Source: Ostrea edulis (lineage: Eukaryota). Taken from it: a stretch of DNA of 64,000 nt. Position numbers and translations under genes: made by a program. The notes under the pieces are model-generated. The model ran no database searches and had not been told where the DNA came from. It saw nothing but the letters and a program-made list of their open reading frames with translations. The DNA lies in the NCBI RefSeq assembly GCF_947568905.1, contig NC_079165.1, forward strand, positions 28,272,001 to 28,336,000. Reading direction: 5' to 3'. Positions 16,847 to 30,775 of this stretch are shown piece by piece. The first letter of the stretch is position 1. Every line of letters starts with the position of its first letter.

Positions 16847-18332
16847 GCTACAGATCCACCCCTTATGAATTGACTGGTTACCTAACACGGAGCAGGCTAC
16901 GTCAGCATATGAAATCATTTGATGCTGTGAGTTTTCGGGTTGCATGGGGCTTTAATGAATATTTGAAGGTATGTTTGGACACATTTAAGTTCTTTAGGAA
17001 AATATGTTGAGAATTTTTTATATTAAATTTATGAGACGACGATGCAAGAATGCAACGACATAAAACCTCAACCGTGCGCATTTTTTTTTCTGCGTCGTAA
17101 ATCGAAGGTTTTTATAAGGGGTGTATATATGTAGTTCTCTGATATGTCCTAATATTTTTCAGAGAGTTACAGTTCTGCAACTACTTGTACTCGTTTGAAT
17201 TTTCCTTGTATTGACTTTCCGTGTAATTGATTACGTCAAAGTCAGGTGATTCACCACCATGATAAGGCCTAGTGAATATAATATGAAGGAATTTTTAATA
17301 CCCCCACCCCTCCCTATTTAAAGTTTATGGTTGAAGTGTTTATCAACACTTGCATGATATTGGCACTAACAGAAAGGAAAATACAAGAAATTCTTCTGAA
17401 TCTTTCCATCACTTTATATGCTACATTTCCAACAGGAAAAATGATGACACGGCGAAAAACATCAATGAAGTCACAGTCCGTGTTTCCGTCACAGCCCGTG
17501 TTTCCTTCTCGGTTGAGAAAAAATATAATAGTACAAACATGAGTTTAGAATTCTTGTCTGAGGATTGTTTTATGATCATAAGGCCAGAGATCAATGTTTG
17601 CTCTTCTCTTAATTTTCTATTCTTTACAGGATTTATGAGTTTGGTATTTTCACTTGTTCATCATCCTCCGAATCTTCTTTGCCAACACCTCTCATCTAGG
17701 AACCTACTCCGCTCAATTGTTTTGCCAAATTAAATACATAGCATGCACGTCGTTTGCGTTGAAAATAGATTAAATGCCTGACAAAAATAAAATGTTTTAA
17801 AAATATTATCATATATATGTGATCTCAAATTACTTTCATTAAACCGCAGAAAGGTCATATCTATATAGCCCAAAATATTGATATATATGCAGATATGAAT
17901 TTTAGAAGAAAAAAAGTACATTAACTAGATATCTGACTAGATGGGAAAAATTCCGCTATAAATGGATATCCACTTCCGCCTCATCGTAGAAACTGAAAGC
18001 AAACACAAGTCTTCAGAAGATTGTCAATGTAGGCTTTTATTTATCTCGCAGAGAAAAAGCGCAAAATCATGATTACACCAATTTGTGCATTAACTCTGAC
18101 TGTGCCAAATTTTAAATACGCTAAAATAAGTCCACATACAGTATATGATTTAATACAATATGATCTACATCACATGCATCTCCTATCTAAAGAGGACTTC
18201 CACATTAGCACGAATTATTCATATCATAATCAAAGTATTGAGAGTACTGATAGGTTGAAATACTATTAATATAAGCACTCTTTCAGAGTTTATTAAATTT
18301 CAATCATGTTCTTTAAATCAAAACAGTTCTTT

Positions 18333-21300
18333 TTAGTCTTGTACATCAAAACAGTAGACGTGTTTAGCTTTGTCGACCCGAAGACCGACCGTGGAATCGG
18401 CGAAAAAATGAATGCAGGGAAACAAAATGGCGATGAATTTCCCAGGAACTATGTCTTCCCACTTGAAGTATGGCGTTGGATCGTCGTTTGGGAGGTAGAA
18501 ACTGACGTAAATCTCTCGTCTCTCAGAATCCTGGGAAAAAAGTTTTGACATAGTCAAAAATAATCTTTAATTGCAGTTTTCTCGTAGACACCCAGTTGTT
18601 TAAGGTGTGTTGTTGATTGTAAATGTATTATATAATGAATGTCCTAGGTTTGTTGTTAATTGTAATTTTATTATAGAATGTAAATAACTTTTAAGGTATC
18701 CGAACCTCATTAGACCACGTGACTAAAAAGACGATGTCGGGACATATCGGTGTAAGTCGGAAGGCGTCGGAAATTAATAAAAGTATTTTAATAAATAAAT
18801 AAAAATGAAATAAATAACTATTTTTTTAAATTTCATTTTGTTCGTCAATCATTAAAAAATAAAATACGTTCAAGTTTGATGTTTCCGTAAAGTCTCGCAC
18901 ACACGAGATGGTGGGAAAATCTGTAATGGCTGCGCCCCTGAAAAAAGTCGTGCGGGACAAACGCGGTCGTTTTACGTCGGATATAGTCAAAAAAGGGGAG
19001 AAGGATGACAGCACAAAACGACAGAAGGGTATTAGAAACATCGTTGTCGAACATAATTACCCCATTGGACATTTTCACGACGATAACAACAGATGTGAAG
19101 AATGTTGTCCGGGAATATCACGGTTAGTGAATTCAAAAAAGATAGAAACGGAAGATTGGGGAAAGGGTAGGCGTGTTGTAGAATTGAGATGTTTGGTCGA
19201 TTCCTTAAGCCACTGTCTGTTCTGTAGGATGGGACCGTTATATCTTGCGCATGAAACTATCAAAGGTGAAATGAAGATGGGACTGGGGGGGGGGGGGTAT
19301 TTGTATATACAGTGTATTAACTGCGGGCAGCTGAATACCATCCCATATGGCAGTACATACTCCGAGCCATCGACAAGAGGACAGAGAATGTTTTCAGTGA
19401 ACACAAAGTTAGGTGCAGGTATGTACTGTGTGTTTATAATTGAGAAATTGTACAATGTTATTGTTTGCATATTCAATTATATGTCACACCCACAGAAGGT
19501 TTGAAATTTGCTGAATATGTTTTGTAGCAATGATTGACTCAATTGGAGGCCCACAACGAGTCAATAATTTCCTTACAACGCTTGATCTCCCATCAATATC
19601 AAACAAAAATCTCAAAGCCATGGAACGACGAGCTGGGCAAATAATTGAAGATTATGCAGAGAAAAGTATGGCCATTGCAACTAAAGTATCATTTGACACT
19701 GAAATGAGGTAAGTTTTTCAAAGTACACAAGGCTACAATAAAATATATGTGTGTTTCCTATTTTAATTCCCCCTAACTTAGGTAAGTAAAACATATGTTT
19801 TACGGCGTGACCGTGTTTGAGGGCGAAGCAAAAAAAAATTTGGCATTAGTATCTATATCCAGAACAGAACAAAAACAACCCGAAGTTAGCAGGATTTGAT
19901 CCGCCTATATATTGAACGCGGGAAATATAACGCAACTGATGTAAACAGTACATTGTGACGTCATATTCAGCGTCGTATTTTAGCAAATTTACAAACATAG
20001 CGTCTGAACCACAACAACAAACATGGCGTTAATGGTGGAGTGATTATATATGATTAAAAAAATAAGATTTACATGCTTTTAAGAAATTTTTGTAACATCT
20101 CAGAACGACGTGAACTAGGGTAGACGAGATTCAAAATGGAGAAATACATGTCCACGCGATAGTATTCGAATCGACGCCATTAGTACCAAAATTTTCAAGT
20201 TCCATAGGTATGGTTTAATTTTTCATTGTTTTCCTATATTTTCCTTTTAAACATGTATATACGTGTTACCTATAGGGAGAGCTCCGCTCTCACGGCCCTT
20301 CGGGCCGTGAGAGGGCTTCGCCCTCTATTATTTTATAAAAAGTTAAACATTTGATCAAAATCTTAGTTTTTGATATGCTGTAAATACAGACCTATCTACA
20401 TTAGAATACTTTTCAAACAATATGATTGATTGATTAGATATTGTTAACGTCCCTCTCGAGCATCCTTCAATCATATGGAGATGAAGGGCTGTAAAATTCA
20501 GGCCTATGTTTGGCGCTTACAGCCTTTGAGCAGGGATGGGTCTTTATCGTGCACAACAGCTGTGACACAGGACCTCGGTTTTTGCAGTCTCATCTGAAGG
20601 ACAGAGAAACTCGAATGCAAATGATATAAAACATTCCTGTATCATCAATAGAGTCTGCAGCAAAAATGTAGATGTAGGGTCGGGAAACCAAAAACACACA
20701 TATATTTTATTTAGGCCTAATATGTTTGAAAGATTGACATAATTGTTATTTGTAGTTTGTCAGAAATTTTTCAATTTAAAATACAGGGAATCATGTAGCC
20801 TTTGTAGGCACATACTGTGTGCGACTCGACACAAAACACTAGGTATTATGCTATTTGATACTTTCATTTTGTAATTTGATATGAGTGGATAGGTATTGAC
20901 TCATTAGAAGTGAGTGCCCTCCTATTTTATTCAGACTCTATCAATTGTGTGCTTCAGGAAAAATTATAAATGAATAAGTGAAACAATCAAAATATGCCAT
21001 GTACCTTCAGAAATTATCATTCATTGTAGTGACATTTCAACTATGGAAGAAAAAAATGTACCATTTGTCCATCATGCTACTTTTGATGAGGAGTTGGGTA
21101 CTGCAGCTATAGATGGTGAATTCCTAGGGTATGTAATATTAGAATGTTGAAACCTATGTTGGAAATGACAAAGTTGTTACACTTCATGTGCATATATAGA
21201 TAACATGTATACCTATGCGAGTATAAATATGATACAACTAAAATAATTTCAGTAATCCTGCATCACTTTTGAAATCTACAAGTGTGCTTCAAGACCAGGA

Positions 21301-23715
21301 GGAAAGTGGCGATTCTGGAAATGATGATGATGATGAGTAAGTGCAACAGTTCTAACATTTTCATTATATACTATAACACTAACAACAGCATATTTTTTTT
21401 AAATCTTGGGAGTGATCTGACTTGTATCAATGTACCAGTTAAACAGACACAGTGCTTGCACTTTTACAATTCATGCACCAGAGAAAAGCCTTGATTAATT
21501 GGAAATATACATTATCTTGTGTTATTTATTTCAGGAATTCTAACCCAGCGCAAGTTTGTCTGCCAGATCGAGATTCACAAAATGTTGACCATTCTCCTCA
21601 GACTCCAAAACTAGTTTGTCCATCACATGTAGATTTACAGGAAATGGACCTTGCTCTTCACACTCCACAAGGAATAGTCAAGTAATTCTCATATACTTTA
21701 ATGCTTTCATGTGATACATTTAATTTCGTTCATATATATTATCATATTGTGAACTTTAGTGCATTCTCATTCTATGTGGACATTATTTATAGTGAAACTG
21801 CACATATAGACAAAGTGTCAGGAAGGTCATTTGGAAAAGTCAAGATGAAAAGACAGGGAGTGGCTGTTTCAAAGAAGCTGAAATTTAACCCATGAACAAG
21901 AACAGGAATGACAGTTTGTGCTGACCATGGCTGGCAAAAAAGGGGATTTGATAGTCTAACAGGTAAGAGAATAAATTATAAAAGTGTAATGTGGAATTCT
22001 GCTGAAAACTGTATAAATTTTCATTTTACGCCATAAAACATTTAAACATTCAACAGGCCATACATTTTTGGTCAGCAAAAGTAAGTATGGCAATAAAGTT
22101 CTTAAAACTGTTATTAAACATCGAACTTGTTCGGTTTGCAAATGGTGGAAACGAAATAGACCTGGACAAAAGGTTCGCAATCACAAATGTGTCTGGAATC
22201 ACAAAGGTTCATCAAGACAGATGGAGGCTATGGCTGGGATTCAGGCGATAAAGGAGATGATGTCACAAAAGACACCAGTTGAAGTTATTGAGGGTGATGG
22301 AGACAATACTGTGATATCAAGGATTGAGAATGAACTGGGTGTAAGAATAAAGAAAAAACTTGACCGTAACCATTGTGTTAAAAATGTCACTAAACATTTA
22401 TATGACTTGAAGAATAGTAAAGCCGCAAAGATAAGCAATCAGGTGATTCAGCACTTCACAAAATGTATCAAGTACATCTTCGCTAAAAATCAAGGTGATC
22501 CAGATGGCATGCGGGAAAACTTGGAAGCATTAGTGCCTCACCAGTTCGGAGACCATACCAAGTGTGTTCCAAGGTTTTGTGGATACAAGAGAAGACCAGC
22601 TGAGACATACTTGCATCGAAGTTTACCGTACAAGACATCACTGAGTGACCCAGTTTTGAAAGAAAAACTTGATAAAATCTTTGAACCTGTGATTGCCAAA
22701 GCTACCTTGTATAGTGATTTAGGGTCCAGCCAAGCTTGCGAACATGCTAATCGAGCAGTCAGTTTACGAGCACCAAAACACTTGCATTATGGGGAAAGTC
22801 AAAGCCTTGACTTCCGTGTAAAAGCTACTGCAGCATGTATGAATGAAGGTCGCAAATACTTACCGGAGGTAGACAAGTTTGATGTTATATTGAGGTGTTT
22901 GTTGAGTTTTGTTCAATTTCCTGTTGTCAGTTTTGACCATTTTTTGCAGCTTATTTTTGAAAATTAATATATATTACTAACAAAAACTCTTCGATGAATG
23001 TGTATATTTTCAAAGTAAGAAAACCTTATTTACATTAACTTTAGGCTAATATTTATTGTTATAAATGAAAGGTGAAGATAACGAACAGTGATGAATCTCA
23101 TAATTCATAATTTTTGAATTACTCGAAAAGAATGATGAATTCTTTCTTGCTCATTCTTATTCTGACAGTGTATATACTATTACTTTTAGGTATTTAAAAA
23201 ATTGATGAAATCTTTCTTGCTCGTTCTTATTCAGTGTATTTACTATTACTTTCAGGTATTTAAAGAACACGGATTATCCCCTGGTCATCATACACTGAAA
23301 TATTCGGAGAAGATGGACATGGAAAGACAGAAGAGACAGGAAAGATCAAAGTTGCCTGGAAAGAAGCGCCGTCGATTGGAATTGAAGCAGGAGAGAATTA
23401 CCCAAAAAGGAGCCAATGAAGCAGCTGAAGGAGATACATATCAATCAGGTAAACAATAACTTACAAAGTGTTAGTTTATGAATAAATCTTGAAATTGATT
23501 GTTTGTATATTAGAGATACATGTATATTCATATTTCATCAGAAGTTGGACTTTCTGACCAAGTCGACATCCAGACTATTCCTGATGCAGTTCCCAAACCA
23601 GGATTCACCAAAGTCGACCACCTGAACGAAGTTCAAGAGAATAGGGTCATTATCGACCTAGAAACTACAGGATTGAGTAAGAAATATTATTGACTTCCAC
23701 ATTTTAGCTGACCTT

Positions 23716-23747
<32 letters not shown>

Positions 23748-26700
23748 TTATTGTCTGTCGTCTGTCTGTAAACTTTTTACTTGCGAATATATAAGGAAAA
23801 TCTATAAATATGGGCCAGGGTGACTCAGGTGAGCGATGTGGTCCATGGGCTCATTGTTGGAGTTTTGAATACCATTACCAATTCTGTATTTAGAGTAAAT
23901 TACATGTATATAGATAGTTTATATCAATATGTGTTTTCATAAGTTTTCAATTCAATTTTATGGATCTTTTTCAGTTCAGCGTGGACTAATGCCTCATATC
24001 ACACAGATTGCTGCACAAGTTATGGATTCTGATGCCGAGTTTTCATATTATGTTTCACCTAAAGTACCCATCAATGAAAATACTGAACAGATAACTGGGA
24101 TATCCTGGGATGGTGAACACATGACTGTGCACGGAAAGCAAGTGGCAACTGTATCGATAACAGAAGCACTTTCAAAATTTTTAATTTTTTTGAAGAACAT
24201 TAGCAATGTTGTTTTGATTGCACACAATGGAAGAGTTTTTGACTTCCGTGTTCTATCCTATGCTATATGTAGAGTAGGAATGATGAATGAATTTTCAAAT
24301 CATGTTTTAGCATTTGTGGATTCTTTGTCATCATTGCGTTCAAAAGTTCCAAAACTTGGTTCTTATAAGCAAGAATTTCTAGCAGAATATTTCTGTCAAG
24401 AATCTTACAATGCTCATGATGCAGTTGATGATGTTAAAATGCTAGCTAAGATTTTGTGTGCAAGTGGCATGACAAAAGCAGATTATGTAAAACATTCTTA
24501 TGCATCAAATTGTCATTTTTTACAAGAAGAGTTCAATCTTGTCAAGGCCAAAAATATTGGCACCCTACATTGTCTTGTTGCCAGTGGTGTTCTCAAATTA
24601 GCTACTGCAGAAAATATAGCAGGTTCTGGCCTAAATCTACAACATTTGAAACTTGTTTGGCAGAGAGATGGTGAAGATGGTCTGAGAAATATTTTTACTG
24701 CAAAAAATTGTATCGAGAAACCACGTGTTACCAAAGATAAAAAGTTGTTGGGAAATATTATTCCAAAGCTTTGTTCATTTTTTGAACAGTAAATTTGTCA
24801 TGTTTTATAAGCATGTTTTGTGTTTGACACATGTAAAGTTGATACATTAGCTATTTGGTCTTTAGATGTGAAAAGTAAACTTTATATGATAATGAGCATT
24901 TCCTAATGATTCAAGGTCAGGTCGATGTTAGTGACATTTATCATTGTTTTATTAAGAGTTCCTATGCTTTCATTGTTTGAATGATACATTTTTCATATGT
25001 CTGTTAATTTTTTTTTCCAAATTGGAATGTTGCATCAAAATGTTTCAATGTTAAGATTTTTGTAAGGGGGGGGGGGGGGGGATGTGGTTCAACATAGTAT
25101 AATGTAAGTTTCCTATGGTAAATGTCTTTATAATTGTGGTAAACAAAAATATAGGGATTGAACTTCATTTGCAGTACATTATTTGTGAAAAGTTTACATT
25201 ATCTTTTTTTAAAAAACAGCGATTTTGTACATTTCGCCGTTTTGCACTTGAATTTTTGTATTGGGGGTGGGGGTGTTCAACATAGCATATTTAAAGTTTT
25301 CTACGGTAAATATCTTTATAATTGTGCTAAACAAAAATATAGGGATTGAACTTCATTTGCAGCAAAATATTTGTGAAATTTCTGCATCATTTTTTTTTAA
25401 AATAGCAATTTTGTACATTTCACCTTTTTGCACTTGAATTTTTATTTTTCTATTTTTCATGTTTTCTCATAGTCAATCTGTCTTTTTGATGTTAGAAGTG
25501 TTTTAAAATAAAAATTATGCTATAATAATAAAAGAAAACTTTAAATGTCTATTTATTTCTTATTTTATTTCATTATTTGAAAAAAAAGTTGCAGCATAAT
25601 TGAAAAATGTTGGGAAATATAAATAATTGATAATATAAGGTAATTTTGCGGTAAATTTTCAATAAAAAACATAGATATATCTTTTAGCATCAATTACGGT
25701 CATAATACACACCTTGATTTACATTTTATAAAAATCCGCTAATGTGGGTCGGATACCTTAAATGCAGCAAACCGTATAGAAATCAACGATGTGATACGAA
25801 AATGAAGAAAAAATATCAACTTCTTCTAAGTCTTGAAAATTTTAACAAATTGTGACAATATATGACAATGGAGTCGTGGTAAAACACCAGTAATAACTCC
25901 CGTTATTCTTTATTTGGAATATGAATCTTATCATTTTGATTTATGTTGTTTGGAGAAAGAATTACACTTCATCATCAGACGGTATCAGTTTTAGAATTCA
26001 AAGAATTTGAAACAACCGTTTCGTTTTCGTTTGTTAAAAGTCCCATTTGAGAGTTTTCCCACTCCATGTAGAGACCTCACCAGTTGTAGATGAAGTCACT
26101 ACGTAAAAATTCAACAGTTAAAAACACATCTGTGCAAAAGAAACTTGCCTGTAAGAACACATTATGGCGGCCCCTGTAGGAATGAAACCTCCTGATGTAT
26201 GCTAAGAACACATTTGGAATAGCACAAATGTTGGAGGCAAAAGGACCTTTCTGTTCAACAGGGATTTCTTTAACTCGGGTTATCAGAGTATAACGAGCAA
26301 ACTCCCTCTTGGTTTTTTCTATCGCTTTTGCGCATGCGTTGGCAGTTCTTTCAATAATCAAATTCATATCTGCACCATCTGCAAAAAATGCTGGATTACC
26401 TTGCAAGGACAATTGGGCATGAGAAGGTGAAGACACCATTGTTCCTTTAGAGCCCTTACTTCCGATGTCTCCTCCGATCGTAAAAAAAATTTTTTGTTCC
26501 GAAATTGGGATCAGCATTTGCAAATTTGTACACATTGTACTGTGCTTTGATTTATCCAACTCTCTACAAATTTCTGAACAGTACACAACCGACCTACAGT
26601 TTGGACACAAGACATTTCCGGCTGCCGATTTACATCGATTACATGAAAACTCGGTATACTTTTTTATTTCTTCTGGTGAAAAAATTATATCATTTCGGTT

Positions 26701-27538
26701 TCTCCCTCCTTGTTCTTCGGGTTTAACAAGACCCATAATATAGCAATCCATGTCGCTCAGAGTCTCTCTGACTGTCGTCTGCAATCTACCGCCTCTACAG
26801 GACATTTTGTGCTTCTTCCAATCCGACGACTGGCAAGATTGGGAGCAATAATAAACTGCTCTACATTGCGAACACACAAGAGAATTGTTTTTACATTTAC
26901 AGTGTGCACATATGGGTGATAGTTCCTCTGCAATATCTGCTTTTGAACATTCGGATTTATGCCTTTTCCAGTCCTTTTTCTGACATTTCTCCGAGCAGTA
27001 CTTCTGTTTTCTACATCTGTTGCATGTCTTCATTTGACCTTCTACTCCACACAAAGAGCACGTTTCTCGTGTGATTTTATCAGCATCTTTCTCAAAATCT
27101 GCAGCTCGGTCATAGATAGCCTCCCTCTCCTCAAGTTCATTGTCAATACCACTATCTACATCTATGGTCTTTGAACATTCGGTTTTGTGTCTCCGAGTCC
27201 AATCACTACGTTGACATTTTCTAGAGCAGTATAATACCGCACTGCATCCTGAACATTTCTTTAGCTGATCTGATGGTTTACCACAGAAATGACACGTGTC
27301 TTTACACCTATCTGGACCTGTACAAAGATAAAAGTAGAGTGTATTTACAGGACCGGGTATGCTGTCCGAATAGGGCATGTGCAAAAGCCTAATAGCGAGT
27401 TTCTTAAAACGCGAGACTGCGCGACGGCGTGTTGTGTATTAACGTATGCGTTTTAAGAAACGCGCTATTCCGCTTTTGCACATGACCCTATCCGAACACC
27501 ATAACCGGGTCTATATTACACGTACGCACCTCCCCCCT

Positions 27539-27577
<39 letters not shown>

Positions 27578-27730
27578 TTCCAACAACACCAGATACCTAA
27601 AAATGTCGGATCCACACAGTGGATACAAGGTCTATTGTACAAGAATGATATAAAGTACTAACCTGCCCCTTCCTTGGGACAAAAGGTAAAGTTTTACGTA
27701 TGTAAAACATGTACAAAAAAAAGAAGCTAG

Positions 27731-27770
<40 letters not shown>

Positions 27771-30584
27771 CAATTACATGTTTATTGTATTTGGCTTGCT
27801 AATTATTACATGTTTTTAACTGCGAATGAGGTTACTCCTATTCGTCCAGTGGACTGGCCTTGCATCCACTTGTGGATCCCACACTCAGAATCCAGTGCTT
27901 TATATATACAAGCTCTAAAAAAGATGGCTAAAGATAAAAGATATACGAAAAAAAGACTTGCAATAAAACATGTAATTTGCAGTGTAAATATGTTTTTGGA
28001 TTTAATATAGTTTTAGTGCAATGTTCTCTCTCGTATATGTTAGCCATTTTATGCAAACCTTTTCGCTTGTCCTGAAGAACGGACAGGTCGTCCCGAAAAT
28101 TTGATAACCTAATTGTTTGTGTCATTGGTTATTTTACTGCTTTGTATAAATCTTGTATTTGACCTTGTATCCACGTTGTGAATCCTACACTGATAGGTGT
28201 TTATATACATGTATATATCTTTATTTTCTTCTAAAACTGGTAATATCTTTACCCAGTACTGAAAAAACCAATAATGAAGACACAATCATTTCTGAAATAC
28301 TTAATCTATGTAATATGATAGCACCATCTTACAGAATTCCGTCTGCAGACTATCCTCCCAGTCAGCCTCAACATCCCTGCCTTCCTCTGTCACTCCGCAT
28401 TCCTGTCTGTGTGTGGGCCAGTCCCGACCCTGACACGCCGAGGAGCAATACCAAGTCTTCCAACAGCCAGTGCACAGTCGGCTATTTTCCAAATTTCCAC
28501 ATACTCGGCACTCCTCTGTGTATTTCCGCCCAATGGGATATGCTTAAGAATTAAAAAAGAATTATTTATTATTTTTCAACAGTGAAATACTGCAATTTAT
28601 CCAATGAATAAAAATAGATATTTTCACGGTTGTTATTTTCTCAGCATGAAGATAATCACAGTATGAAAATATGAACCAGAACAAGCAAATTGCCGGGATA
28701 TTCATCCGCGATAAACATGTACATAATCACATTTATTTTTATATATAATCTAAAATGTTTCATGTTTGAATAATGAAAATAAAACTGACGTTAAGTTGTC
28801 TTATTGCTCAAATGTATTGGTTTATATCTGCGCAACATTGGTTTGAACGTCATGAAATAGATTTTATATCCCACAACAAAACAATATACAGCCTTGTAAA
28901 AGGCCCTAGAGTAATTTGTCTTATATAAGGCGCTATATAAATTTTCTCTATTATTATTATTATTATTAGTATACAGAGAATAGCAAAATGCAATGTAATC
29001 ATTTTCAAAAAATAAAATAAAATGTACATCTTTCTAAACGTATCTTTTCATGTTTATCTGTATTTTTAAAAAAAGAGAATACATTTGACACATATAGAAC
29101 AATTTTGAAAAAAAAAAAAAATAACGATATCGTATATAAGAATATTCTATAGACATGTGTAGCTACAACAGTTTATTAATAGATTAGAGCTGTTTGTGTC
29201 ACGTGTACACCTCACCCGCCCCTGTCAGACATGTCGTCTTGTGACCCCCTTTCCAATGTTTTCTCTGACAGTCCCTAGAACAGTACCATTCTCCCTTACA
29301 ACGACTACACCTTTGTAAATCCAGGGATCGCAGGCCACAAAAACTGCATTCATTTCCTTCATCCATTTTATTTGCTACAAATATATAGGAGGATAGCACA
29401 CTGTCTACCATTCAGAATGAATTACGAATTTCTTTATTAAATTTTTCAATTATTTTCTGTAACAATCCCGCTAGCTACAACAGACCTTGATTTAAAACAC
29501 TTTTAGACATAGAATGATTTCATATAGAACACGCAAGTCAAGAACAAGTAATCAATGTAATAAGAAACTGAGTTTTATAGAAATGTATTTCTCACAAAAC
29601 AGATCACGGAATCTTAAAAAAATAAATAAATAAGTAAATGATAAAAAAAAAAAAAAAAAAAAAACCAACAAAAAAACCGTTTATACTATTTTGTATGATA
29701 TTTTGCTTGGCCAATAATCCAAACATTTTATCTATACACCCCCCCTCACATTTTTGTACGTTCCATCATCCATTTATCCACAAGATATTGCAACTTGGGT
29801 GCAACTTTTAAAACTGACAATACGCTCAGACTTTCAATTTTAACTTTAAATTTCTATATACGGGATATGTTTGCATTCTGCGATCATTATTTATTCCAGA
29901 TCTACTGGTATCAAACTTTTGAAAAAAATCTTGTTGGAAGACAAGGGTATGTATTTATTTGATGTAATGATTGATTTGTTAGTTGAGTTGACTCCAACAG
30001 ACAAAAATTTATGTGAATGAATCAAAAGAAGATTTACAAGTACAAAAAGGTCAAGTCTTGCTTACTGTGGCTCAAAAACAAGAAATTAATGACCAGTTTT
30101 TATTTTCATAAATACCTTTTAATGTAGAAATTAAAACTATATTTCCATAAGGATTTGCAATATCACAAAAATAAGGTTTAAACCTCAAAATGCAGTATAA
30201 TCATTTTCAAAAAATAAAATAAAAAATATTTTTCTAACCGAGCCTTTTCATGATGTTTATCTGTAATTGGACTTTTGGAATAGCAATAAATCTAAAAGGA
30301 ATCTTTGTCATGCAGAAAAATTTTGTAGAAGATTATAATAACGTATACAATGTAAGAATTCTATACATGTGTAGCTACAACAGTGTATTAATAGATTAGA
30401 GCTGTTCGTGTCACGTGTACACCGTACCCTCACCGGTCCCTGTCAGACATGTCGTCTTGTGACCCCCTTTCCAATGTTTTCTCTGACAGTCCCTAGAACA
30501 GTACCATTCTCCTTTACAACGACTACACCTTTGTAAATCCGGGGATCGCAGGCCACAAAAACTGCATTCATTTCCCTCATCCAT
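18333..30584 (-). CDS. Multi-MYND zinc-finger protein (7 MYND fingers plus uncharacterised C-terminal domain), about 628 aa, at least 5 coding exons
   Basis: Minus-strand exons are 30592-30434 (ATG at 30584), 29374-29216, 28542-28333, 27317-26149 and 18530-18333, giving 1887 nt in frame from the ATG. Three phase-1/1 exons each carry one CxxC..CxxC..YC..CQ..W..H..C finger and the large exon carries four. The last intron has a CAG|GCAAGT donor and a TTTTTTCCCAG|GAT acceptor. AATAAA (minus) lies at 18294-18289. Upstream exons are not excluded. Confidence 0.8.
19819..20325. mobile_element. Probable nested non-autonomous insertion (Helentron/HINE-like) in transposase intron 2
   Basis: An 11-bp inverted pair GAGGGCGAAGC (19819-19829) and GCTTCGCCCTC (20315-20325) flanks the region. 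A perfect 12-bp stem CTCTCACGGCCC-TTC-GGGCCGTGAGAG lies at 20287-20313. Confidence 0.45.
20423..20602 (-). mobile_element. Meta-core SINE fragment nested in transposase intron 2
   Basis: Reverse complement of the SINE 3' half seen at 10240-10530 and 41976-42230, with a (TGAT)n tail at 20423-20435. Confidence 0.7.
23702..23858. mobile_element. Short Helentron-associated element (HINE) in transposase intron 9
   Basis: It starts TTTTAGCTGACCTTAGCTGAAAGCTCAAGTGAGC, contains GTCTGTC microsatellite-like units and ends CAGGTGAGCGATGTGGTCCATGGGCTCATTGTT. This is the typical bivalve HINE layout as I recall it. Confidence 0.7.
25065..25445. repeat. Two degenerate ~190-bp direct repeats near the transposon 3' end
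   Basis: TTCAACATAG...GGTAAAT.TCTTTATAATTGTG.TAAACAAAAATATAGGGATTGAACTTCATTTGCAG...TTTTGCACTTGAATTTT occurs twice. Confidence 0.8.
27351..27511. mobile_element. Palindromic (foldback) MITE-like element in a MYND gene intron
   Basis: Inner arms 27391-27412 and 27448-27469 match at 21/22 positions. Imperfect arms extend to 27351 and 27511. Confidence 0.7.
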
Positions 30585-30775
30585 TTCAATTGCTACAAAT
30601 ATATAGGAGGATAGCACAAAGACTACCATTTTCAGAAATTCTTTATTACATAATCCAATTATTTTCCGCAATATTCCCGTTAATTGAAAAAGACTTTGAT
30701 TTAAAACACTTTAAGATACGGAGTGATTCCACACAGAATACGTAGGTTAAGTTATCAATGTAAGAAACTGAGGTT
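28985..30775 (-). repeat. Tandem duplication (~600-bp homologous blocks, offset ~1.2 kb) carrying two copies of a MYND exon
   Basis: Exons 29216-29374 and 30434-30592 differ at 7 of 159 nt. The flanking intron sequence is also homologous but more diverged. Confidence 0.9.

What the first reader, a model, noticed from the sequence alone, without database searches (positions are those of the whole stretch)
18333..27317. The MYND gene's last exon lies 7.6 kb away across the transposon and is joined by a GC-AG intron
The ORF track shows 26077-27384 and 18333-18557 as unrelated. A consensus non-canonical donor CAG|GCAAGT at 26149/26148 and a strong acceptor TTTTTTCCCAG|GAT at 18531/18530 join them in phase 0 as ...RGRHNVFLQ-DSERREIYVSFY..., followed by a stop and AATAAA. 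Removing the element and one TTAA leaves an ordinary 551-bp intron. An annotation pipeline would probably split or truncate this gene.
Basis: seen in the sequence. Interest (0 to 1): 0.7.

Follow-up and report, generated by a model that had tools for sequence, protein, structure and literature searches.

The report
Oyster MYND gene intron holding transposon
It is ordinary, though, because NCBI's annotation already joins the exons.

Summary
Confirmed, but ordinary and already annotated. The window is Ostrea edulis. On the minus strand the large MYND exon ends at 26149 (CAG|GCAAGT). The 65-codon last exon starts at 18530 after TTTTTTCCCAG. Both boundaries are in phase 0.

An RNA-like run has a contig that runs from 26149 straight into 23 letters of the last exon. 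That 24-mer is unique in the genome. RefSeq isoforms X1 and X2 of LOC125680749 already carry ...NVFLQDSERREIY...CFDVQD.

Orthologues in Crassostrea virginica and Saccostrea echinata, and two paralogues, have an intron at the same position and phase. All four use GT donors, so the GC donor is specific to this gene.

The insert is 18695-25757, 7063 bp, with TTAA duplicated. It is a KolobokD-like transposon lying antisense to the gene, and at least five other copies are 98.6-99.4% alike. Two public contigs carry the empty site with one TTAA and a 551-nt intron, exactly as predicted. The insertion is therefore polymorphic.

- The one marker available (26546) ties the spliced RNA to the empty haplotype. 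Splicing of the 7.6-kb intron on the transposon-bearing allele itself is not shown.

The parts
30426..30584 (-). First coding exon of LOC125680749 (MDEGNEC..., MYND finger 1). Boundaries are approximate, taken from tblastn.
   Evidence: tblastn of P0001 and P0016 on the window
29214..29375 (-). Duplicated copy of the first MYND exon, used only in isoform X1. It lies in a 1.2-kb tandem duplication. Boundaries are approximate.
   Evidence: tblastn of P0016; direct repeats D8, D11, D12
28333..28543 (-). MYND exon (...ENSRLCTGCWKTWYCSS...TEF). Its 3' end at 28333 is fixed by an RNA joint. Its 5' end is approximate.
   Evidence: X7 joint 27315->28331, cut +2, CT..AC on the + strand, depth 116; tblastn
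26149..27317 (-). Large exon: four MYND fingers plus the first part of the conserved C-terminal domain. It ends ...RGRHNVFLQ.
   Evidence: Pfam zf-MYND 2.8e-37; 100% identical to P0001; X7 contigs at depth about 100-126
26143..26151 (-). GC donor site CAG|GCAAGT (the exon's last base is 26149).
   Evidence: Sequence; X7 loose end at this place
18531..26148 (-). Last intron, GC-AG, phase 0, 7618 nt in this assembly and 551 nt in the empty allele.
18695..25757 (+). KolobokD-like DNA transposon, 7063 bp. Its genes are on the + strand, antisense to the host gene.
   Evidence: TIRs and TTAA; absent from L004 and L008; other copies with TTAA; PF20700 transposase and RNase_T/PML_C exonuclease
18691..18694 (.). 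Left TTAA target-site duplication.
25758..25761 (.). Right TTAA target-site duplication.
19797..20325 (.). Nested multi-copy repeat of about 530 bp inside the transposon. Most other copies of the transposon lack it. Limits are approximate.
   Evidence: Copies join element positions 1102/1108 directly to 1632; positions 1099-1636 also occur alone in many places
18336..18530 (-). Last coding exon (65 codons, DSERREIY...CFDVQD), followed by stop TAA at 18333-18335. It is the most conserved part of the protein.
   Evidence: 37 of 65 residues are invariant among 7 oyster proteins

Best explanation
This is the Ostrea edulis gene LOC125680749. It encodes a protein with six or seven MYND zinc fingers and a conserved, unnamed C-terminal domain. 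The domain is split by a phase-0 intron that is old within oysters.

In this gene the intron's donor has changed from GT to GC. The rest of the donor remains consensus (CAG|GCAAGT), which is typical of GC-AG introns removed by the major (U2) spliceosome.

In the haplotype that was assembled, a young KolobokD-like cut-and-paste transposon of 7063 bp inserted at a TTAA. The site is 391 nt below the donor and 164 nt above the acceptor, and the element lies antisense to the gene. The donor, branch region, polypyrimidine tract and acceptor are untouched. The intron simply grew from 551 to 7618 nt.

Shown:
- the sites and the frame;
- the junction in RNA;
- the conserved intron position;
- the element's limits;
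- the empty allele.

Inferred: that the transposon-bearing allele is spliced the same way and as efficiently.
For: Sequence and frame.

RNA: run X7 behaves as RNA. It has the joint 27317/28333 with GT..AG on the minus strand, exon depth of about 100-126, and depth 6 in the flanking intron. One of its contigs goes from 26149 into GTAAATCTCTCGTCTCTCAGAAT, which is the + strand of 18508-18530. The 24-mer occurs once in the window and once in the 895-Mb genome, even allowing 2 mismatches.

Annotation: RefSeq isoforms X1 (630 aa) and X2 (577 aa) are 100% identical to the window's exons and contain ...NVFLQDSERREIY...CFDVQD.

Conservation: proteins from Saccostrea, Magallana and Crassostrea keep ...YLQDS[ED]RREIY.... 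The genomic loci have an intron at the same codon boundary:
- C. virginica: 1225 nt, GT donor.
- S. echinata: 372 nt, GT donor.
- Paralogue L002: 886 nt, GT donor.
- Paralogue L003: 150 nt, GT donor.

Empty site: L004 equals window 27459-25758 joined to 18694-17097 through one TTAA, at 99.9% identity. L008 shows the same join. L004 also has the GC donor and a 551-nt intron.

Transposon: five other copies, 98.6-99.4% alike, begin TTAA|GGTATCC. For the two whose right end was read it is GGATACC|TTAA. The transposase and DEDDh exonuclease domains were found. These features match Kolobok/KolobokD as described in PMC9587614.

GC-AG is the major non-canonical class, handled by U2, and makes up under 1% of introns (PMC7072748).
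Against: The junction-bearing RNA cannot be assigned to the transposon-bearing allele. X7's exon contig has G at 26546. The empty-site contig L004 also has G there, while the reference has T.

Read laying was limited to 6000 letters, so 18531-22599 was not examined for alternative acceptors. Only 23 letters of the last exon were seen attached.

Contig depths are a poor measure of splicing efficiency. The evidence behind the RefSeq models could not be inspected.
Confidence: 0.93

Rival explanations
1. The gene model is right, but the transposon-bearing allele is impaired: spliced less efficiently, spliced to cryptic sites on the element's antisense strand, or silenced. On this reading the correct junction seen in RNA comes only from empty alleles.
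For: In X7 the only variant seen at 26546 is G, the variant carried by the empty-site contig L004. The reference (filled) allele has T. An X7 intron contig stops exactly at 25758, the element boundary. That is what a graph branch between filled and empty alleles would give. The GC donor is intrinsically weaker than the GT donors of all four homologous introns.
Against: All splice signals are intact and lie 164 nt or more from the element. Introns of 7-8 kb with antisense elements are commonplace in animal genes (general knowledge). Contigs drop minor variants, so absence of T at 26546 in X7 proves nothing. No joint from 26149 into 22600-26148 was seen.
Confidence: 0.15
2. The main product is the unspliced one. 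Transcripts read through the GC site to the TGA at 26077-26079, giving a 433/435-aa protein ending ...VFLQASFFCTDVFLTVEFLRSDFIYNW. The 18333-18557 ORF is unrelated.
For: Intron-blind gene callers produce such a protein from public contigs of this species (P0017). Proteins from relatives also stop in the intron at this junction (P0006...NVYLQASSSQRQRV). Unspliced contigs exist (L004).
Against: There is a spliced junction in RNA. X7 depth falls from about 100 in the exon to about 6 at 25800-25999. The last exon is the best conserved part of the protein, with 37 of 65 residues invariant, and it follows the same junction in three other genera. The read-through tail is not conserved.
Confidence: 0.03
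3. The 7-kb element is an assembly artefact: a collapsed or misjoined repeat placed in the intron.
For: Two public contigs lack it. The family has many near-identical copies.
Against: The element is complete, with both TIRs and a perfect TTAA duplication at a site that has a single TTAA in the empty allele. That is the signature of a real transposition, not a misjoin. An X7 contig ends exactly at the boundary, as a filled/empty branch would give.
Confidence: 0.03

Closest known systems
RefSeq gene LOC125680749 of Ostrea edulis (XP_056009559-62, isoforms X1 and X2)
   Same: It is the same gene. The proteins are 100% identical to the window's exons and contain the exact join ...RGRHNVFLQDSERREIY...CFDVQD.
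   Different: Nothing in the coding model differs. The record names the protein 'uncharacterized'. As far as could be seen here, it says nothing about the GC donor, the transposon in the intron or its polymorphism.
GC-AG introns of the major (U2) spliceosome
   Same: GC at the first two intron bases, AG at the end, and an otherwise consensus donor (CAG|GCAAGT). Removal is seen in RNA. This is the commonest non-canonical class, under 1% of introns (PMC7072748).
   Different: The homologous introns of two other oyster genera and two paralogues all have GT. This is therefore a lineage- or gene-specific GT-to-GC change, not a conserved GC intron.
KolobokD lineage of Kolobok DNA transposons (Mob DNA 2022;13:24, PMC9587614)
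   Same: TTAA target-site duplication, 5'-GG...CC-3' termini (RR..YY), a DDD/E-type transposase, and a DEDDh (DnaQ/TREX-like) exonuclease downstream on the same strand. The lineage is reported from molluscs.
   Different: Placement in the KolobokD clade was not tested by phylogeny. This copy also carries a nested repeat of about 530 bp.
Polymorphic intronic transposon insertions in bivalve genomes
   Same: Filled and empty alleles of one site both occur in public data. The element is antisense to the host gene and clear of the splice signals.
   Different: Allele frequency and any effect on expression are unknown.

Membership tests
GC-AG U2-type intron | GC at intron positions +1/+2 and AG at the 3' end | tested here: met
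   GC at 26148-26147 and AG at 18532-18531 on the minus strand
GC-AG U2-type intron | Otherwise consensus donor (MAG|GCAAGT), polypyrimidine tract before the AG, and no U12-type /RTATCC donor | tested here: met
   CAG|GCAAGT and TTTTTTCCCAG, read from the sequence. The consensus itself is established knowledge.
GC-AG U2-type intron | The intron is actually removed at these sites in RNA | tested here: met
   An X7 contig joins 26149 to the start of the last exon. The joined 24-mer is unique in the genome. The allele of origin was probably the 551-nt form.
GC-AG U2-type intron | Removal by the U2 rather than the U12 spliceosome | not testable with these tools
   Inferred from the donor sequence only
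Kolobok superfamily / KolobokD lineage | [quoted passage not shown] | tested here: met
   TTAA on both sides here and a single TTAA in the empty alleles. Five other copies have TTAA at the left end, and the right end was read for two of them.
Kolobok superfamily / KolobokD lineage | Termini 5'-RR ... YY-3' with short TIRs | tested here: met
   GGTATCCGAAC... / ...GTCGGATACC. The 24-nt arms, which include the flanking TTAA, are 92% complementary. Criterion from PMC9587614.
Kolobok superfamily / KolobokD lineage | DDD/E transposase of the Kolobok type | tested here: inconclusive
   Pfam PF20700 'Mutator-like transposase' matches three ORF pieces (3.9e-30, 1.8e-6, 1.2e-6). Catalytic residues and phylogenetic placement among Kolobok families were not examined.
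Kolobok superfamily / KolobokD lineage | DEDDh (DnaQ-like) exonuclease encoded downstream of the transposase | tested here: met
   RNase_T 4.3e-12 and PML_C 9e-20 at 23929-24792. Upstream exons are joined by GT..AG joints 23449-23541 and 23677-23974 in X7.
MYND zinc-finger proteins | zf-MYND domains (PF01753) | tested here: met
   Six stretches in P0001, E 8.3e-58; four in the large exon

The most novel reading that the evidence does not exclude
The young KolobokD insertion is a segregating structural variant that lowers or alters the output of this MYND gene. The weak GC donor, unique to this gene among its homologues, may make the 14-fold longer intron inefficient to remove. That would explain why the only expressed variant seen at 26546 is the one linked to the empty allele.
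Probability: 0.12. Interest if true: 0.3.

Novelty: already known. Interest (0 to 1): 0.12.

Why it matters
It matters little beyond correct bookkeeping. The gene model is already in RefSeq, GC-AG introns are a well-known minor class, and transposons in introns are commonplace.

Two modest points are worth keeping:
- The case is a clean, fully documented filled/empty pair for a recently active KolobokD transposon in the European flat oyster. It could serve as a marker or as evidence of ongoing Kolobok activity.
- Protein collections built by intron-blind ORF calling hold truncated versions of this family that stop in the intron at this junction (P0006, P0017). Such truncated entries could mislead domain analyses of the unnamed C-terminal domain.

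Tried and rejected
1. Pfam on the last exon alone, on the tail of the large exon, and on whole orthologues gave no family for the C-terminal domain, even at E up to 10.

2. AlphaFold2 of P0001 with a 7-sequence alignment gave pLDDT under 50 for residues 385-577. No fold search was run on it.

3. The ESM Atlas gave only leads: fungal hypothetical proteins at 0.89-0.91 and TTC5_OB at 0.77. I did not adopt them.

4. The look-up of encoding contigs found no record for P0008, P0004 or the reference-allele 433-aa ORF. No public contig of the filled allele was obtained, so linkage of 26546-T with the insertion rests on the reference alone.

5. Read laying could not span both splice sites because of the 6000-letter limit. 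I chose the donor side plus an upstream intron as a positive control. The region 18531-22599 was therefore not examined.

Exons were searched by reference, and the joined sequence was taken only from database protein P0001.

7. I considered and rejected a U12-type intron: the donor is not /RTATCC.

8. I considered and rejected piggyBac for the TTAA element: the termini are GG..CC and the transposase matches PF20700.

Full report
**Observation.**
On the minus strand the large MYND exon ends at 26149 and is followed by GCAAGT (TTACAG|GCAAGTTTCT). The small exon starts at 18530 after ...AACTTTTTTCCCAG. Both boundaries fall between codons, so the join reads ...RGRHNVFLQ|DSERREIYVSFY.... It ends in CFDVQD, with stop TAA at 18335-18333 and an AATAAA at 18294-18289.

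The intervening 7618 nt contain an element bounded by TTAA + GGTATCCGAACCTCATTAG ... CTAATGTGGGTCGGATACC + TTAA. The element is therefore 18695-25757, 7063 bp.

**Whose gene it is.**
A protein search with the large exon, given by reference, returned a 577-aa RefSeq protein at 100% identity. It is 'uncharacterized protein LOC125680749 isoform X2 [Ostrea edulis]'. Its sequence and that of isoform X1 (630 aa) both contain ...RGRHNVFLQDSERREIYVSFYLPNDDPTPYF...CFDVQD.

NCBI's annotation therefore already joins the two exons. It does hold for intron-blind ORF callers. The same cluster holds a 433-aa product from a public contig that reads into the intron (P0017). Several proteins from relatives stop in the intron at the same junction (P0006).

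Mapping X1 and X2 onto the window gives these exons on the minus strand:
- about 30584-30426;
- about 29375-29214 (X1 only, a tandemly duplicated exon);
- about 28543-28333;
- 27317-26149;
- 18530-18336.

**RNA evidence.**
One read-laying run was allowed, with at most 6000 letters, so both splice sites could not be covered. I laid four runs on 22600-28599 to cover the donor plus an upstream intron as a control.

Run X7 behaves as RNA:
- One contig joins 27315 to 28331 (cut +2, CT..AC on the + strand, which is GT..AG on the minus strand) at depth 116.
- Exon depth is about 100-126.
- Depth at 25800-25999 is 6.

X7 also has a contig whose match stops at 26148. Its loose letters there are GTAAATCTCTCGTCTCTCAGAAT, which is the + strand of 18508-18530. 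The extra matched C at 26148 is the letter shared with 18530. The 24-mer occurs once in the window and once in the whole 895-Mb genome, even allowing two mismatches. The 26149|18530 junction therefore exists in RNA.

Runs X11 and X12 look like DNA. Their low-depth contigs cross the donor and lie in introns.

**Comparative evidence.**
The last exon has two paralogues in the genome. Orthologous proteins of Saccostrea, Magallana and Crassostrea all read ...YLQDS[ED]RREIY....

At the DNA level an intron sits at the same codon boundary, in phase 0, in all four homologous loci examined:
- C. virginica: 1225 nt, CAG|GTACGT.
- S. echinata: 372 nt, CAG|GTAAAT.
- Paralogue L002: 886 nt, CAG|GTTATA.
- Paralogue L003: 150 nt, CAA|GTAAGG.

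Only the gene in the window has GC, so this is a recent GT-to-GC change in an old intron. The last exon is the most conserved part of the protein, with 37 of 65 residues invariant among seven oyster proteins.

GC-AG is the major non-canonical class. It is removed by the U2 spliceosome and makes up under 1% of introns in model organisms (PMC7072748).

**The empty site.**
Looking up P0017 returned a 3296-nt public contig (L004). By blastn it equals window 27459-25758 joined to 18694-17097 with a 4-nt overlap, the single TTAA, at 99.9% identity. It has the same GC donor and a 551-nt intron.

A second contig from another run (L008) joins 17948-18694 to 25758-25883 in the same way. It carries a few more differences, so it is a different haplotype.

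**The element.**
- Its ORFs lie on the + strand, antisense to the host gene.
- Three pieces match Pfam PF20700 (Mutator-like transposase). A downstream ORF matches RNase_T and PML_C, a DEDDh exonuclease.
- X7 shows GT..AG joints inside it, at 23449-23541 and 23677-23974.
- One other copy in the genome covers the full 7063 bp. At least five copies are 98.6-99.4% identical to this one, and older copies are 88-94% identical.
- All five copies fetched begin TTAA|GGTATCC. For the two whose right end was read it is GGATACC|TTAA.
- Most copies lack element positions 1103-1631. That stretch also occurs alone in many places. The window's copy therefore carries a nested repeat of about 530 bp (19797-20325).

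The TTAA duplication, RR..YY termini, DDD/E transposase and DEDDh exonuclease are the published features of Kolobok and its KolobokD lineage, which is reported from molluscs (PMC9587614). I did not test phylogenetic placement.

**What is not shown.**
The spliced RNA cannot be assigned to the transposon-bearing allele.

The only marker available is 26546. The reference (filled allele) has T, giving Lys. The empty contig L004 has G on the + strand, giving Thr. X7's exon contig also has G, at full depth.

An X7 intron contig ends exactly at 25758. That fits a branch between filled and empty alleles in that sample, but it is only suggestive.

Contigs drop minor variants. The data therefore neither show nor exclude splicing of the 7.6-kb form.

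The splice signals are intact, 391 nt (donor) and 164 nt (acceptor) from the element. I infer normal splicing and put about 15% on an impaired allele.

**Left out and led nowhere.**
I did not build or search a joined model of my own. The joined sequence used is database protein P0001.

The C-terminal domain has no Pfam match. An AlphaFold2 model from seven sequences was unusable there. The Atlas gave only leads.

**Verdict.**
The finding is ordinary and already annotated. The only addition is a well-documented polymorphic insertion of a young Kolobok element.

Noticed in passing
window 21930-23676: In RNA-like run X7 a 2218-nt contig at depth 133 joins the transposon's exon ending ...GATAGTCTAACAG (21962) directly to 23256. 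This skips the exon with ORF 22068-22967, which holds most of the PF20700 catalytic region. Depth over 22600-22999 is only 1-4. The skipped form goes out of frame (T G I stop). Most transcripts of this family in that sample may therefore encode a truncated transposase.
   Followed up: partly
window 19797-20325: A repeat of about 530 bp is nested in the transposon. It is shared with one other copy (C8:53.6 Mb, 99.3% alike) and absent from at least four others. It also occurs alone at more than 15 places at 98-100% identity. It ends in a G+C-rich hairpin (20272-20328). Its family is not determined.
   Followed up: partly
L002:390-548 (G000:C8:35478080-35481268): The closest paralogue (73% identical in the last exon) has an insertion of about 157 bp inside its large coding exon, between ...IPN and VFLAYIRR, flanked by a repeated CTAATG. 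It is probably a pseudogene. The insert starts AAGGTGAAGATAACGAACAGTGAT, the same head as the very high-copy repeat at window 23070-23100 (depth 10^4-10^5).
   Followed up: partly
window 29150-29542 and 30362-30751: A 1.2-kb tandem duplication (90-95% identity) contains the first MYND coding exon. RefSeq isoform X1 uses both copies and X2 uses one.
   Followed up: partly
window 27385-27500: A short inverted-repeat element (TCGGATAGGGTCATGTGCAAAAGC ... GCTTTTGCACATGCCCTATTCGGA) sits in the intron just upstream of the 27317 acceptor. It supplies the ATG that intron-blind callers use for the 433-aa ORF.
   Followed up: no
P0001 residues about 400-577 (window 26149-26480 and 18336-18530, minus strand): A conserved C-terminal domain has no Pfam match. 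By Atlas features its nearest neighbours are fungal hypothetical proteins (0.89-0.91) and, weakly, TTC5_OB (0.77). The fold was not resolved.
   Followed up: partly
G000:C1:5.12-5.64 Mb: Four equally spaced, equally diverged (88-94%) copies of the same transposon lie on contig 1. They look like one old copy multiplied by a segmental tandem duplication with a period of about 100-130 kb.
   Followed up: no
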